64,000 nucleotides of DNA from Camelus dromedarius (Eukaryota). A model generated the notes under the pieces. It was not told the DNA's origin and did no database searches. It worked only from the letters and a program-made list of their open reading frames with translations. The stretch spans positions 32,426,001-32,490,000 of the forward strand of contig NC_087451.1 of assembly GCF_036321535.1 (NCBI RefSeq), written 5' to 3'. Numbering within the stretch: the first letter of the stretch is position 1; each line of letters begins with the position of its first letter. Shown one piece after another: positions 2,939 to 62,701 of the stretch. The position numbers and the translations under genes are program-made.

Positions 2939-4080
2939 CTGTGTTGAGAGAGAGTGGTGGGGTCATTTCCTCTGCAGACAGGATCAACCTGGGAGCGCCC
3001 AGGTCCACGCCGACCACTATGTCCTGTCCACCTCATGAGCCCCGGTACTAAGTGATCAAGTTCATTGCATCCTTACTGAATGAGACACGAGCTCTCTTTC
3101 TATTCTCTGCATCAATTTGTATCAAATAGTTCTCTGTTCTTTAAAAATCTGCAAAAATGTCACCTGTAAGCTCTCTGGCATGCGGTTTGTTTTCTGTTTC
3201 TTGGCAGGGTAGAGGAGGAGGAGTTTTGACTGCCTATTTACTTATTCCTGGGAGCAGGCCTCAGGCTAGGTCTTGTTCAAAGTAGAAAGAATCTGGGAAG
3301 CTTCTCACTTCTTTTTGGCAGCATCCCCTGCCCCATCCTCATCCTTGGCTGCCCTGCAAGTAATGGCTCTCACTGGCTGCCCACAAATCCTTGCTGTGAT
3401 ATTGATTGTGGTGGGGTATCTGTATTTCTGTTTTGCCTAAATATTCTTCAAACTCATAAAATGTAAAATTAAAACAATATAAATGCCAGAGTCATAAATG
3501 TGTTAAAAATTGTGGAGACTTGGGCAGCAGGGGTGATGTTTCAGCAGAGGGAACCACACACGTGGTCATTCTGATTATGATACAGGGCTGGGGTCTGTTC
3601 TGGTCCCATGTAGGACTAGTCCTGCCTCAGGTCAATCAGAAGATCTTTTCAAGTGTTACTTATGCAACAAATAAAAACTTGAACTTGTTTGAAAAATCCC
3701 ACGTATCGGATGCCCTATTTCCTGAACAAATACAGAATATAGGGGATGAGACTGAGGTCAAACTGGCCATGCCCACAGCAGACCCTGAGCTGAGATCGAT
3801 GCCTTCTATGGGCACCCACGAAGGGCAGGGCAGGTTCTAGGAGACCCAGCAGCTGCCACAAGTGACACCTCCTAGGTGTTAACTGCTTAGGTTGAAATGA
3901 AATTGCGGGGCCCATAAGTAGGCACTCACATTACCAAGTGCTTCATGATTTATGAACTCATATGATCTGCACTACAATCCTATCCCCACCTTAACTGATT
4001 GCTCAGCGTAGAAGAGGAGTGGAGCTTGGGTCTCCTGACTTCAGGCCAGGTGTTGGCTCCTTTTCACTCCTCCCACCCAC

Positions 4081-8895: not shown

Positions 8896-10158
<1,263 letters not shown>

Positions 10159-15329: not shown

Positions 15330-15830
15330 TGTGACATAATAAGAACTATGTAACTAGTCTCTGCTCCTGGTTCCCTAANNNNNNNNNNNNNNNNNNNNNN
15401 NNNNNNNNNNNNNNNNNNNNNNNNNNNNNNNNNNNNNNNNNNNNNNNNNNNNNNNNNNNNNNNNNNNNNNNNNNNNNNNNNNNNNNNNNNNNNNNNNNNN
15501 NNNNNNNNNNNNNNNNNNNCCCTCATCCTTTGGAGGGAAGGGAGAGGGGCTGGAGATTGAGTTAATAATTTATCATGCCGACATAATGAAGCCTCCATAA
15601 AAATCCCTAAACTATGGGGAGTCCGGCACAGAAGCTCCTGCCCTTAGGCCCCTCCTGGACCCTATGTGTCTCTTCACCTGGCGTTTCACGCATGTCCTTT
15701 ACAATATGCATTATAAAAAAAAAAAAACGGTAAATGTAAGTAAAGTGCTTTCTGAGCTCTGGGAGCGGCTTTAGCAAATTACTGAACCTGAGGAGGCGGG
15801 TTGCGGGAAACCTCGTGTCTGTAACCAGAT
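15330..15830 (+). mobile_element. MER21-like ERVL solo LTR, interrupted by a 141-N gap at 15379-15519
   Basis: gaagcctccataaaaatccctaa...ggtaaatgtaagtaaagtgctttctgagctctg...tagcaaattactgaacctgaggagg resembles the recalled MER21 consensus. Confidence 0.65.
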
Positions 15831-21780: not shown

Positions 21781-23165
21781 AAAATAAAGCAAATGTTTTC
21801 ATTAAAATAGAGTATACATCCAGAAAAATGTACACATCATAACAAGGTAGCAGGATGAATTTTTACAAACTGAACACAGTCAAGGATAATTAACATCCTA
21901 TCAAGAAACAAAGTATTTACCAGCCTCCAGAAATCCCTTGTGTGCCCTGGTTACTACCCCTTAGGCGGTAACGGCCACCCTAAGCCTGTTTTTGAACTTG
22001 TATGAACGGAATAAGATTGAGGCTGGGCTCTGCTGTGTTTGGTCTCTCTTGTTCAACATCAGGTATGGGCTGAATGGTACTCCACGGCATGTGTACACTA
22101 CATTTTATTTATCATTCTCCTGCTGGGGTATATTTGAGTTGTCCCCAGTTTTTGCCTATTTTGGGTAACGTTGCTGTGAATGTTTGTGTATGTTTATTCA
22201 TGTTTCTGTTGAGTACCTCAGGAAGCCATGTGTCCAGCTTTAGTGAAGCTCTTGCCATTTTAAAGGAAGACCTGCTTTGTTGTCTTGTTTTTCCTTATTC
22301 GACTTTATTGACGTCTAATGAACTATAATAAGACGCACCCATTTTGAGTGTGCAGGTCAGTTACTTTTGACAGAAGTATGCACCTGTGTAAACACCACCA
22401 CAATCAAGATACAGAGCATTTTCATCATCCCAGACGGTTTCCTCATGTCCCTTTGCAATTAGTATCCCCCACCCACTCCTCCCCAGGCAAGGACTGACTT
22501 GATTTCTATCACCAGGTATTGGTTCTGCCCATTCTTGGACTTCTTATAAATGGGATCATACAGTAAGTAATTGTATCTTCTTACCCTCCTCATAATTTCT
22601 GAGAGATTATACCTATCAGCGCATCCAGTGTTACTGGACCGTCTCCTCCTTGTTATGAGGTAGGCTGTCTGCATCCTAGTTGGTGTATCCATTCTCCTGT
22701 TGGTGGACATTTAGGCTGCCTCCGCTTTGGCTGTGATGAATGACGCTGCAACGATTGTCCAGGTTCACATCATCCTTCCTTTCTGGAGGGGGAAGGTAAT
22801 TAGGTTTACCACTTGAGCTATACCCTCCCCCCAACATCTTAACATGGTCACGTATTTCATTACTCCTGAGTGAATACCTGGGAGCTGAATCGCTGTGTCA
22901 TAGGGTAAGTGCATATTTACCTCACAAGGAACTGCCGAACTGTTTTCCAAGGAGTTTGTACAACTTTTCACTCTTAGCAATGAAACAGAGGTCGGTTACT
23001 CCGCATCCCCTTGCCAACGCTCAGTGTTGCCTGGCTGTTTAATTTTAGCCATTCTCCAGGTCTGAAGGACTCTCTCATTGGGATTTTAATTTGCATTTTC
23101 CTGAAGACTAATGATGTGGAGCATCTTTTCATGTGTTTATTGGCCATTTGTACCTTTCCTTTGGT
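21780..23165 (-). mobile_element. Old L1M (L1MB/MC-like) fragments
   Basis: aacaccaccacaatcaagatacagagcatttt..., ttaatttgcattttcctgaagactaatgatgtggagcatcttttcatgtgtttattggccatttg. Confidence 0.75.
22772..22832 (-). mobile_element. Internally deleted Vic-1-type SINE nested in L1M
   Basis: Minus strand GGGGGGAGGGTATAGCTCAAGTGGT joined directly to AAACCTAATTACCT(T)CCCCC, i.e. the head and tail of the full copy at 62545-62701. Confidence 0.7.
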
Positions 23166-36311: not shown

Positions 36312-36952
36312 NNNNNNNNNNNNNNNNNNNNNNNNNNNNNNNNNNNNNNNNNNNNNNNNNNNNNNNNNNNNNNNNNNNNNNNNNNNNNNNNNNNNNNNNN
36401 NNNNNNNNNNNNNNNNNNNNNNNNNNNNNNNNNNNNNNNNNNNNNNNNNNNNNNNNNNNNNNNNNNNNNNNNNNNNNNNNNNNNNNNNNNNNNNNNNNNN
36501 NNNNNNNNNNNNNNNNNNNNNNNNNNNNNNNNNNNNNNNNNNNTTTTCAAATTATATGCCCAGGAGAGGGAATCATGAGCAGGACTTGAAAAGAGAGCAG
36601 AGAAGGGTCTCTCCAGGATGAAGTGAAGGAACAGGGATGTGAGCGACTGTGGTGGGCAGTCGTGGGCTTTAAAGTATCACAGGATCTGAAGGATACCCAA
36701 GCCAAGCCCCTCACTGCACGGATGGGGAGAGAGGCCCAGAGAGGGGACAGATTCAGCACAGAGCACAGACAGGGTCGTCTTGGAGCTGGGCTGAGAACCT
36801 CAGCCTCCTCATGTCTCTACCAGGTCCCGATGGAGTCGGGGGCAGAGGAGGGAGGGCAGAAGAACCCACAGGTCCCCCAGTGCTAGGTGAGGATGCCTGG
36901 GGCAGGTGGAGAGGCACAGTGCTGCCTGGCGTGACCCTTGTGTCTATGACAG

Positions 36953-39761: not shown

Positions 39762-40658
39762 AGCAGAGTTTGGGATCCAAGCAGCCCTTTTGGAATGACG
39801 CAGGTTTGGCAGCCTCCTGCTTTGCTATAGGTTACTGCTGCTCTTTGGAAATGCATTAGCAACTCAAAAATGGCCTTAAGGTCTGGGAATGCGATCAATC
39901 AAACTGCTAATTCCCCATATGAAAAATGCAATGTCAGAAAAGGCCCCATTGCACAGTCCTGGCTAATGATTAAAACCATCCTAAAATGACTCACTGTTAT
40001 TGATCTGGGCCCAAGTGCGAAAAGGACTGCAGCTGGACACCCTGGTACCAGATGTGGCTGTACAACAGGCGCCCAGGAACAAGTCACTCCATCACTTTGA
40101 GGCTTAATTTTCTGTTGCTTGATTTCTCTGAGGATGAGTTGGGAATGAGTGGGGCTGGCGAAATGAGGGGAGATGACAGGAGTGAATCAAGCCCTTCCAA
40201 GGCTCTGCAGTGACCTCAGGTCTAATTTACAGAGGCACGTCGGAGGTCATAACATTGATGATGATGGTAGCAAATGCCTGTTCAGAACTTGTGGCCCTTG
40301 TTTATCTATGCTATCTAATTTTCATCTTTACAAGAAGTTGGTACTATTTTCCCCTCACATTACGTATTGTGAAGATAAGCCTTGGAGAGATTAAACCTAT
40401 CAATGTCATATAGCTAGTAAGTGGAGGAAGAAAGATTCAAACCTAGTGTGTCTGATTCCAGAATCCTTTCTCTTAACCACCAGACATACTACCCCTGGGT
40501 AGGGAGCCCTATAGGGCTTTCTGGGGTTTCTGATCCTGAATCTCCTTCTGTTTCTCCCATGTGCGAGGATAACAAATGGATCATTAAGACAAACTCTTGA
40601 TGAACTTCCATTATGTACCACATACCGTGCAAAGCTCTGGGGATGTAAGAGTGAATGA

Positions 40659-40858
40659 TTTAGAGATTTGCAGATACTAACTACTATATGGAAAACAGAT
40701 AAACAACAAGTTTCTACTGTATAGCACAGGCAACTATATTCAATATCTTTTAGTAACCTATAATGAAAAAGAATATGAAAAGGAATACATGTATGTATAC
40801 GTATGACTGAAACATTATGCCATACACCAGAAATTGACAAAAAAACCAAAAACAAAAC
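40659..40858 (+). mobile_element. 5'-truncated L1 insertion with target-site duplication
   Basis: L1 3' end ...gaaacattatgccatacaccagaaattgac plus A-rich tail; AGTGAATGA at 40650-40658 and 40859-40867. Confidence 0.85.
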
Positions 40859-40904
40859 AGTGAATGAAATTGGGCCCCAGTCTCCTGGAGCTTGTTGTCT
40901 TGTG

Positions 40905-41211
40905 CAGGAATTTACAAACTTTTCCAGTCAAAGGCCAGAGAGTAAATATTTTGTAGATGATACAGTCTCTGTCACAACTACTCAACGGCACCATCAAAGT
41001 GCAAAACAGCCAGAGACAATATGTAAAGAAATGAGCATCATTGTTTTTCAATAAAATTTTTAAAATTTTATGTAATTTTCACATTACAGAATATTATTCT
41101 TTACAGTGTTTAAAAACTTTTTAAGAATGTAATACACTATGAACTTGTGGGTTGTACAAAAACAGGTAGTGGGCAGGATTTGGCCTGCAAACTGTAGTTT
41201 GCCTAATCCTG
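40905..41211 (+). mobile_element. MER58-type hAT transposon
   Basis: caggaatttacaaacttttt...aaaggccagagagtaaatatttt...tctctgtcacaactactcaac...gatttggcctgcaaactgtagtttgcc. Confidence 0.75.
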
Positions 41212-41400
41212 GTCGAGTGGGACAAGCACAAAACACAGTGGCTTATTAGAAGTCAGAGCAGTATTTACTTCTCAGTACCAGGGAGCGGAAGTGACTAGAA
41301 GGGGCACAAGGAACTCCTGGGGGTGCTGGCCATGTTCTATTTATTGATCTGTGTGGTGATCACATGGTTACATCTTGTGATGATTCGTCAAACAGTACTT

Positions 41401-41633
41401 TCTTTTCCTATTTACTTATTTACTTTTTTAAAAACACCTTTATTGTGGTATGATTCCTGTACAGTAAACTACACATATTTCAGATGTGCAATTTGATGAA
41501 TTTTGATAGATGTTTACACCAGTGAAACCACCACCACCACAATCAAGGTAGCAAATGGAGATACCAGGGATTGAACCCAGGACCTCATGCATGCTAAGCA
41601 TGCACTCTACCACTAAGCTATACCCTCCCCCCA
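41401..41633 (-). mobile_element. Composite retroposon: tRNA-Ala/Vic-1 head, old L1M 3' end and A-rich tail, with a 13-bp TSD
   Basis: TCAAACAGTACTT at 41388-41400 and 41634-41646; head 41632-41556 with A and B boxes; AATAAA 41444-41439; T5 41434-41430; A-rich tail 41429-41401. Confidence 0.8.
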
Positions 41634-41678
41634 TCAAACAGTACTTATAATTTGTGTGCTTTTCTGTTTGTTACACTT

Positions 41679-42130
41679 TGTAAAGAAAAAAATGTTGCCT
41701 GCTATTCCAGTTCTACAAGGATCAAGCCATTAGTCACTGTAGTCACTCACCGACTGTTCCCTGAGGGGAATTCAGGATGGGGAAAAACAGAAAGCATTCT
41801 GCAATGATTTGGATATACAGGCCCCTAGATAAGTTACATATTTAAGGGAAAAATGTCAATGATCCTAGATTCTTCCATCTTCCCATATATGGAAAAGCAC
41901 TAAAATCATTAACTCGAGTTATCTGTTCTATGTGATGAGCAGTAATCTTTTTATGCTTGACTTCATGTTTTTCCCAGCAAGAAAAAAAGTTTATATATAT
42001 CTTGACTCCTCCCTTACCTCTTTGGAGCAGTTTCTCAGAATAATCCGAGAGCCTGTCTCCTGGGCTACAGTTCTAAGATCTCAGAATAAAACTTAATTCA
42101 CAACATTGTGCATTTTTCTTTCAGTTGACA
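41679..42130 (+). mobile_element. ERV1-type solo LTR (MER34/MER31-like)
   Basis: TGTAAAG...TTTCAGTTGACA termini, TATA-like tttatatatat near 41990, AATAAA 42085-42090, flanks ACTT/ACTG consistent with a 4-bp TSD with one mismatch. Confidence 0.7.
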
Positions 42131-61913: not shown

Positions 61914-62028
61914 GCATCTACTGAATGTCACNNNNNNNNNNNNNNNNNNNNNNNNNNNNNNNNNNNNNNNNNNNNNNNNNNNNNNNNNNNNNNNNNNNNN
62001 NNNNNNNNNNNNNNNNNNNNNNNNNNNN
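61914..62028 (+). CDS. GRIN2C: GRIN2C coding exon 3; 3' end inferred inside the 132-N gap (61932-62063)
   Basis: CAG|G CAT CTA CTG AAT GTC AC = (R)HLLNVT; end placed using the recalled 115-nt human exon, whose phase fits the next exon. Confidence 0.75.
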
Positions 62029-62544
62029 NNNNNNNNNNNNNNNNNNNNNNNNNNNNNNNNNNNCTCTCCTTTTGTCCCCACCTATTGTCCCACAGCCGAG
62101 AGTCCCTACTGTCCCTCATCCAGCCCCTCATCCTTCAGGTCTCAGCTGAAACATCTCCACTGAGAAGCCTTCCAGGCCCCCCAGGGTGGGTGAGGCACCT
62201 CTGCTCGGGGCTCCCACAACACCCCGGCCTCCCTCCGCTGTAGAATTTACCAAGCACTCTTGTTACATTGTCCTGCCCCAGGAGGGGTAACCCACAGCTG
62301 TGCTGGCTAGATGGCCATGTTAACTAGTAGAATTTGGGGAGATCAGTGCTTGAGAAGAAATGTTTGCAAAGCATTATGGGAGTAGAAAAGAAGGGCAGAA
62401 ATTCATTCTGCCTTTAAAGGAGGAAACTGGGGAAGGCTTCACAGAAGTTGGGACATTTGGGCTGTGCTATGGAGGGTTGAATAGGAGCCCACCAGGAAGG
62501 GATACTAGCCTGTTATTGACAGAAGGGAAGGAGGGCTTGGGATA

Positions 62545-62701
62545 TTTTTTGTTTGGTTGGTTTGGGGGTTGTTGGGGAGGGGAGGTAATTAGGTTTATTT
62601 ATTTATTTACTTATTTTTTTTTCAATGGAGGTACTGGGGATTGAACCCAGGACCCCGCTCATGCTAAGCACGCACTCTGCCACTGAGCTCTACCCTCCCC
62701 C
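62545..62701 (-). mobile_element. Full-length Vic-1-type tRNA-Ala-derived SINE (camelid)
   Basis: Minus strand GGGGGAGGGTAGAGCTCAGTGG...GGGTTCAATCCCCAGTACCTCCA, A-rich linker, CCTAATTACCTCCCC, A-rich tail; degenerate TSD tgggRYatttttt. Confidence 0.85.

What the first reader, a model, noticed from the sequence alone, without database searches (positions are those of the whole stretch)
41388..41646. Candidate new composite SINE: tRNA-Ala head, captured L1M 3' end, AATAAA, Pol III terminator and A tail, mobilised as one unit
Seen: a 13-bp direct repeat TCAAACAGTACTT (41388-41400, 41634-41646) flanks a 233-bp insert that interrupts an older plus-strand L1M remnant. On the minus strand the insert has a tRNA-Ala(AGC)-like head with A box and B box GGTTCAATCCC ending in CCA (41632-41556). 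About 110 nt resembling an ancient L1M 3' UTR follow, then AATAAA (41444-41439), GGTG, TTTTT (41434-41430, the first run of four or more T after the head) and an A-rich tail. The normal Vic-1 tail (CCTAATTACCTCCCC, present at 62545-62701) is absent. Known: some tRNA-derived SINEs (the B2/Can-type 'T+' class) have Pol III transcripts polyadenylated through AAUAAA placed just before a T-run terminator. Inference: a Vic-1 head inserted upstream of an L1 relic, read through to that terminator, used the relic's AATAAA and was retrotransposed by L1 as a chimera. It is either a one-off 3' transduction/template switch or a member of an unrecognised camelid SINE subfamily.
Basis: partly seen in the sequence, partly recalled or inferred. 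Interest (0 to 1): 0.75.

Follow-up and report, generated by a model that had tools for sequence, protein, structure and literature searches.

The report
Camel SINE head joined to L1 end
A camel Vic-1 SINE copy carries about 125 bases of a LINE-1 3' end between its tRNA-like head and its A-rich tail, all inside one pair of target-site duplications; it is most likely a one-off by-product of LINE-1 reverse transcription, a known kind of event, and nothing found here shows a new SINE family.

Summary
These are the exact 13-bp direct repeat, the tRNA-Ala(AGC)-like Vic-1 head, a true L1 3'-terminal fragment, AATAAA, GGTG, T5 and an A-rich tail. The usual Vic-1 3' unit is absent, and the target is an older plus-strand L1 3' end.

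The AATAAA-T5 module is the L1 fragment's own 3' terminus, so no T+ SINE design is needed to explain it. The "CCA" is the templated acceptor end. The A-rich tail is A6, G, four TAAR units, then AAAAGA, which has the architecture of Vic-1's own A-rich linker and shares a 13-mer with it. That fits poorly with a poly(A) added after Pol III termination at T5.

My ranking of the explanations:
- **One LINE-1 insertion event with template switching** between a Vic-1 RNA and an L1 mRNA 3' end, in two or three parts: about 0.55.
- **A short L1 fragment nested without its own TSD in a short Vic-1 copy:** about 0.25.
- **A propagating composite SINE:** about 0.08.

The family test could not be run. The scan has not noted this element before.

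The parts
41634..41646 (.). Target-site duplication, the copy at the element's 5' side (element is on the minus strand)
   Evidence: Exact 13-mer, one of only two occurrences in the window
41633..41633 (-). One extra base (T on the minus strand) between the TSD and the SINE's first G
   Evidence: Read directly; an untemplated base at a 5' junction is an inference
41556..41632 (-). Full-length Vic-1 (SINE_VV) head: G-rich leader plus tRNA-Ala(AGC)-like domain with A and B boxes, ending ...CTCCA
   Evidence: ARAGORN, Rfam tRNA 50.7 bits, 86% identity to the Vic-1 copy at 62.6 kb
41551..41555 (-). Junction bases TTTGC of unresolved origin. TT/TTG can be read as Vic-1 (CCATTG in the 62.6-kb copy) or as L1 (CTCTG in the 22.3-kb L1), so this is possible microhomology
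   Evidence: Comparison; inference
41430..41550 (-). 5'-truncated L1 3'-terminal fragment (3' UTR end) with three UGUA motifs, AATAAA (41444-41439), GGTG and T5 (41434-41430)
   Evidence: Same-order alignment with the L1 3' end at 22296-22440, z = 15.2; motifs located
41401..41429 (-). A-rich tail: A6, G, four TAAR units, AAAAGA. It resembles the A-rich linker of Vic-1
   Evidence: A 13-mer is shared with the 62.6-kb Vic-1 linker: 94 of 5000 shuffles reach this, and none of about 20 other A-rich tracts in the window shares more than 9 nt
41388..41400 (.). Target-site duplication, the copy at the element's 3' side
41320..41387 (+). Older L1 3' UTR relic (the target), part upstream of the insertion
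   Evidence: Local alignment to L1 3' ends runs across the joined flanks, z = 5.0 and 6.5
41647..41693 (+). Older L1 3' UTR relic (the target), part downstream, ending in its own short A tail. The first-strand nick site reads ACTT/ATAA on the plus strand
   Evidence: The nick site is inferred from TSD geometry

Best explanation
This is a one-off product of a single LINE-1 target-primed reverse transcription event that used two RNA templates. The L1 endonuclease nicked the plus strand at ACTT/ATAA inside an old L1 relic. Reverse transcription then produced a cDNA that joins about 125 nt of an L1 mRNA 3' end to a complete Vic-1 head, and copying ran to the 5' end of the Pol III Vic-1 RNA. There are two versions. 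In the two-part version, priming was on the L1 poly(A), and the enzyme switched to Vic-1 RNA at the only TTG in that RNA, in CCAUUG at the head/linker boundary. In the three-part version, priming was on Vic-1's own A-rich region. The T-run of the cDNA slipped onto the poly(A) of the L1 mRNA, copied its last 125 nt, and returned to the Vic-1 RNA at CCAUUG. The three-part version also accounts for the Vic-1-like tail, the short A6 run and the lack of an inner TSD. RNA ligation before reverse transcription is an equivalent route for the two-part form. What is shown: the anatomy, the single TSD pair, and the L1 and Vic-1 identities. What is inferred: the switching itself and the microhomology. The AATAAA-T5 module is the L1's own 3' terminus and need not have worked as a Pol III terminator.
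For: One exact 13-bp TSD pair encloses head, L1 piece and tail. Head and L1 piece have the same orientation and abut directly, with no run of five or more A and no inner repeat between them. The L1 piece runs to the native L1 3' terminus. The head is 5'-complete. The tail shares a 13-mer and its layout with the Vic-1 linker. TTG occurs once in the 62.6-kb Vic-1 copy, at the head/linker boundary (by eye). [quoted passage not shown] Double template jumps that make three-part chimeras have also been described (PMC2104539, title and abstract).
Against: A single locus cannot separate one event from two. The two-part version needs an L1 poly(A) that came to look like the Vic-1 linker. The three-part version needs two switches, which is rare. 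The Vic-1 part lacks its 3' unit, whereas most Alu parts in Alu/L1 chimeras are full length. The nick site ACTT/ATAA matches the TTTT/AA consensus only partly. The microhomology rests on one Vic-1 copy and one diverged L1 copy.
Confidence: 0.55

Rival explanations
1. Two separate insertions. A short Vic-1 copy (head plus A-rich tail) inserted first and made the 13-bp TSD. Later a very short 5'-truncated L1 3' end inserted in the same orientation at the head/tail boundary. The antisense strand there reads TTTTTT/AATGG, a consensus L1 endonuclease site. This second insertion left no TSD of its own.
For: The tail looks like Vic-1's own A-rich region. SINEBase describes vic-1 as a 'simple' SINE, meaning head plus tail (PMC3531059). 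SINE A tails are favoured L1 targets and force the same orientation (general knowledge of L1 endonuclease preference). Removing 41430-41555 leaves an ordinary short SINE with TSDs.
Against: There is no inner TSD of any length, and the head is intact to ...CCATT, so the second-strand break would have had to be blunt to within about 1 nt. Such events are a small minority of L1 insertions (my own estimate from the cell-culture literature, not checked here). Almost no L1 poly(A) is present: the A run is 6 nt, or 11 nt counting a GT interruption, against 9 nt in the 62.6-kb copy's linker.
Confidence: 0.25
2. One reading: a composite SINE. A source locus with a Vic-1 head directly upstream of an L1 3' end is transcribed by Pol III and terminates at T5. 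The RNA is polyadenylated through AAUAAA in the manner of T+ SINEs, then copied by L1, either once (a 3' transduction) or many times (an unrecognised camelid subfamily).
For: There is no T4 between the head and T5. AATAAA lies 4 nt before T5 and three UGUA motifs lie upstream. These match the published T+ signals of AATAAA, a T4 or TCTTT terminator, an A tail and a UGUA tau signal (PMC8466645). The A and B boxes are intact enough for ARAGORN and Rfam to call a tRNA.
Against: These signals are the native end of any L1 mRNA of this type, so finding them together is expected by descent. The source junction would itself need a chimeric event, because a normal Vic-1 insertion leaves an A tail and a TSD before the relic. 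A tail added after T5 should be homopolymeric, but this one has the Vic-1 linker layout. There is only one junction copy in the window. Known L1 chimeras do not propagate.
Confidence: 0.08
3. A 5'-truncated retrocopy of a Pol II transcript, such as a host 3' UTR, in which a Vic-1 head and an L1 3' end already lay side by side and the L1 AATAAA served as the poly(A) signal.
For: The L1 end carries a complete Pol II poly(A) module. RNA libraries hold words of this locus, so such regions are transcribed.
Against: The truncation would have to fall, within one base, on the first base of the SINE. The source would need the same unexplained tail-less junction. The tail is not homopolymeric.
Confidence: 0.04

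Closest known systems
Alu/LINE-1 and U6/LINE-1 chimeric insertions (Law & Burns, PMC11838501 / PMC13174262; RNA-ligation route in PMC6789731)
   Same: A Pol III RNA at the 5' side in sense orientation joined directly to a 5'-truncated L1 3' end, with one TSD pair, an A-rich 3' end and an L1-type target. These are one-off events.
   Different: The 5' partner here is the camelid Vic-1 SINE, and only its head is present; the Alu parts are mostly full length. The tail looks like the SINE's own A-rich region rather than L1 poly(A). Arrival of both parts at the same time was not tested.
Three-part chimeric retrocopies made by double template jumps (PMC2104539)
   Same: If the tail is Vic-1's, the order Vic-1 tail, L1 piece, Vic-1 head along the cDNA needs two switches within one reverse transcription.
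   Different: Here the first and third templates would be the same RNA, left and rejoined at the same point. That case was described in a fungus with a different LINE.
T+ SINEs (B2, Dip, Ves, Can, C and others; PMC8466645)
   Same: A tRNA-derived head, AATAAA just before a T-run, UGUA upstream and an A-rich tail.
   Different: The module is a recognisable L1 3' end. There is no evidence of more than one copy, of Pol III termination at T5, or of polyadenylation. The tail is not poly(A)-like.
Canonical Vic-1 / SINE_VV of camelids
   Same: The same head, with G leader, tRNA-Ala(AGC)-like domain and ...CTCCATT, followed further on by an A-run plus TAAR-repeat region.
   Different: It lacks the AACCTAATTACC... 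3' unit seen in both other copies in the window, and it carries 125 nt of L1 between head and A-rich region.

Membership tests
L1-mediated chimeric insertion (SINE/LINE-1, U6/LINE-1 type) | Non-L1 RNA copy directly 5' of an L1 3' end, in sense orientation | tested here: met
   Head 41556-41632 and L1 piece 41430-41550 are both on the minus strand and abut
L1-mediated chimeric insertion (SINE/LINE-1, U6/LINE-1 type) | One TSD pair flanks both components, with no TSD or A tail between them | tested here: met
   13-bp exact repeat; no inner repeat; no run of five or more A between head and AATAAA
L1-mediated chimeric insertion (SINE/LINE-1, U6/LINE-1 type) | L1 part reaches the native 3' terminus and is followed by poly(A) | tested here: inconclusive
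   The terminus is reached. The tail, however, has the architecture of the Vic-1 linker rather than decayed poly(A)
L1-mediated chimeric insertion (SINE/LINE-1, U6/LINE-1 type) | L1 endonuclease motif (TTTT/AA) at the target | tested here: inconclusive
   The inferred nick ACTT/ATAA is a partial match
L1-mediated chimeric insertion (SINE/LINE-1, U6/LINE-1 type) | Both parts arrive at the same time in cross-species comparison | not testable with these tools
   No camelid or outgroup genomes were reachable.
Canonical Vic-1 (SINE_VV) | tRNA-Ala-derived head with the family's G-rich leader | tested here: met
Canonical Vic-1 (SINE_VV) | A-rich linker followed by the AACCTAATTACC... unit, as in the two other copies in the window | tested here: not met
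   The unit is found only at 62579-62595 and 22790-22806
T+ SINE class | AATAAA upstream of a T4 or TCTTT terminator, followed by an A-rich tail, on a tRNA-derived SINE | tested here: met
   Motif positions; definition from PMC8466645. The module is inherited from L1
T+ SINE class | Pol III transcript ends at the terminator and is polyadenylated through AAUAAA | not testable with these tools
   Needs transfection and 3' RACE.
A SINE family in the SINEBase sense | Many copies of common origin with the same modules and different TSDs | not testable with these tools
   One junction copy in 64 kb. The junction scan of JGI metagenomes gave one chance bacterial hit. The scan of bacterial and archaeal genomes gave none. 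Neither collection holds camel DNA

The most novel reading that the evidence does not exclude
The locus is a copy, or the founder, of an unrecognised camelid composite SINE. In it a Vic-1 head acquired an L1 3' end that acts as a ready-made T+ tail: three UGUA motifs, AAUAAA and a T5 Pol III terminator. That would show directly how the polyadenylation modules of T+ SINEs can be borrowed from the partner LINE.
Probability: 0.07. Interest if true: 0.6.

Novelty: new member of a known kind. Interest (0 to 1): 0.2.

Why it matters
As it stands, the locus is one more fossil of LINE-1 joining a SINE RNA to its own 3' end. That is useful mainly as a camelid example and as a caution for repeat annotation: a SINE head next to an L1 3' end automatically shows T+-like signals. 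It would matter more only if the same junction recurs at other loci. In that case it would record the birth of a SINE whose polyadenylation and terminator tail comes from L1.

Tried and rejected
- **Reads test lost.** The junction patterns (41544-41565) and the findings query (41401-41566) lie outside that stretch. Two within-window tools covered it by reference only: the ORF list and the repeat scan.
- **Junction scan of JGI metagenome contigs.** One hit, L001, which is a chance match inside a bacterial coding region.
- **Junction scan of bacterial and archaeal genomes.** No hit. Neither scan says anything about camel copies.
- **The search of earlier findings** by place, words and sequence.
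- **SINEBase supplementary consensus sequences.** Not held, so there was no Vic-1 consensus to compare with.
- **Pfam on ten nearby ORFs.** No families found, so the host gene was not identified.
- **A third L1 3' end at 3401.** Not one.
- **Independent side-by-side insertion of Vic-1 next to an L1 piece.** Rejected: no Vic-1 tail or TSD lies at the inner junction.
- **A true tRNA-Ala pseudogene.** Rejected: the head has the Vic-1 leader.
- **My first hand estimate** that the tail/linker 13-mer was a chance match. Corrected.

Full report
**Observation**

The minus strand of 41388-41646 reads, 5' to 3', as follows:
- a 13-bp repeat copy (41646-41634);
- one extra T (41633);
- a G-rich leader and a tRNA-Ala(AGC)-like domain (41632-41556);
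- five junction bases, TTTGC;
- about 120 nt ending in CAATAAAG, GTG and T5 (41550-41430);
- a 29-nt A-rich tail (41429-41401);
- the second repeat copy (41400-41388).

The 13-mer occurs only at these two places in the window, even allowing one mismatch, and it is the longest direct repeat around the locus. ARAGORN and Rfam (50.7 bits) both call the tRNA-like domain.

The head belongs to Vic-1 and is not a tRNA pseudogene. It shares the family's G-rich leader with the two other copies in the window and is 86% identical to the copy at 62.6 kb. Its terminal ...CTCCA is the templated acceptor end, also present in the 62.6-kb copy, and not an added CCA.

**The body is an L1 3' terminus**

The stretch 41550-41438 aligns in the same order with the L1 3' end at 22.3 kb, from TACCTTGATTG to CAATAAAG (z = 15.2, 0 of 500 dinucleotide shuffles). 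In both elements the A-rich tail starts a few bases after AATAAAG. The AATAAA, the following T-rich bases and the three upstream UGUA motifs are therefore the L1's own Pol II polyadenylation module.

The flanks, joined across the insertion site, are homologous to L1 3' ends on the plus strand (z = 5.0 and 6.5, against 0.4 for the reverse orientation). This confirms that the target is an older L1 relic. The inferred first-strand nick site is ACTT/ATAA on the plus strand, a partial match to the L1 endonuclease consensus.

**The tail**

The usual Vic-1 3' unit (AACCTAATTACC...) is present at 62.6 kb and at 22.8 kb but not here. The tail, however, is not a decayed homopolymer. It is A6, G, four TAAR units, then AAAAGA.

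The 62.6-kb copy has, right after ...CTCCATTG, an A9 run followed by five TAAR units, and the two share the 13-mer AAATAAGTAAATA. Only 94 of 5000 composition-preserving shuffles reach that length. None of about 20 other A-rich tracts in the window shares more than 9 nt with the linker. I take the tail to be probably, though not certainly, Vic-1's own templated A-rich region.

- A read-through from a Vic-1 source upstream of an L1 relic would carry the source's A tail and TSD between head and relic. Neither is there.
- A Pol III transcript ending at T5 and then polyadenylated should give a homopolymeric tail.
- The T+-like signals (definition in PMC8466645) come with any L1 3' end of this type, so finding them together is not evidence of design.
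- No second copy of the junction exists in the window.

From then on I kept all letters of that stretch out of every search. The scans I could run, on JGI metagenomes and on bacterial and archaeal genomes, returned one chance bacterial match and nothing, respectively. Neither collection holds camel DNA.

**Mechanism**

SINE/LINE-1 and small-RNA/LINE-1 chimeric insertions are a documented class. In human there are 113 Alu/LINE-1 chimeras, mostly in sense orientation, with TSDs, poly(A) and endonuclease motifs. U6/LINE-1 chimeras each arise from a unique event and do not propagate. The proposed routes are template switching during target-primed reverse transcription or prior RNA ligation (PMC11838501; PMC6789731 by title). 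This locus has that anatomy.

I rank the explanations as follows.

1. **One insertion event with template switching, about 0.55.**
   - Two parts: L1 poly(A) and 3' end, then the Vic-1 head.
   - Three parts: Vic-1 A-rich region, then the L1 3' end reached when the cDNA's T-run slips onto the L1 poly(A), then back to the Vic-1 head.
   - The three-part form explains the Vic-1-like tail, the short A6 run and the missing inner TSD in one step. Double jumps are documented (PMC2104539) but rare.
   - In both forms the landing point fits microhomology. The only TTG in the 62.6-kb Vic-1 copy is the one in CCATTG at the head/linker boundary (by eye), and the L1 side plausibly reads T(C/T)TG just before the aligned part.
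2. **Two events, about 0.25.** A short Vic-1 copy of head plus A-rich tail inserted first; SINEBase calls vic-1 a simple SINE. It was later hit at its TTTTTT/AATGG boundary by a very short L1 fragment. This needs a blunt insertion with no TSD that added almost no poly(A).
3. **A propagating or transduced composite, about 0.08.**
4. **A truncated Pol II retrocopy, about 0.04.**

The odds between the first two rest on rough base rates that I reasoned out from general knowledge. They are not tool results.

**Context**

DNA runs of two organism labels hold 0.85-0.95 of the sampled words of 41200-41850, and six RNA libraries hold 0.33-0.82. The insert is therefore probably fixed and shared by at least two labelled taxa, and the region is transcribed or carried as DNA in those libraries. 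No finer reading was possible.

An earlier unchecked note of this scan (s1-170759) reports an mRNA fragment inside a tRNA-Ala SINE elsewhere in this genome. If that is real, it is the same kind of sandwich. Another note (s1-182970) identifies the genome as camel.

**Verdict**

The locus is an ordinary, probably single-event by-product of LINE-1 activity: a camelid member of a known kind. It is not shown to be a new SINE. Interest is low unless the junction is found at other loci.

Noticed in passing
window 22790-22835 (minus strand): An internally deleted Vic-1. The first ~26 nt of the head are joined directly to the AACCTAATTACC... 3' unit, so the rest of the head and the A-rich linker are missing. 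It is nested in an L1 whose ORF2-like sequence continues on both sides.
   Followed up: partly
window 41436-41449 and 41536-41549: A 14-nt inverted repeat, 93% complementary, pairs the first bases of the captured L1 piece with the AATAAA region. The predicted RNA fold closes the whole piece into one domain (-33 kcal/mol, z = -2.15). The older L1 3' end at 22.3 kb does not fold this way (z = +0.61). The 5' truncation point lies 5-8 nt outside the stem.
   Followed up: partly
window 41200-41850: Six RNA-seq libraries, several labelled 'reproductive system metagenome', hold 33-82% of the sampled words of this repeat-rich stretch. The region is therefore transcribed, for example as an intron or UTR, or present as DNA in those libraries.
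   Followed up: no
window 40001-42000: An AT-rich island (GC 0.39) in an otherwise GC-rich, gene-dense window (GC 0.45-0.67). It coincides with the old L1 relic and this insert.
   Followed up: no
window 9102-9241, 9574-9745, 15379-15519, 36312-36543, 61932-62063: Five runs of N, 132-232 bases each.
   Followed up: no
L001 5276-5296: The only metagenome match to the 21-nt junction pattern lies in an AT-rich bacterial contig inside a long coding-like region. It is a chance match unrelated to the camel element.
   Followed up: yes
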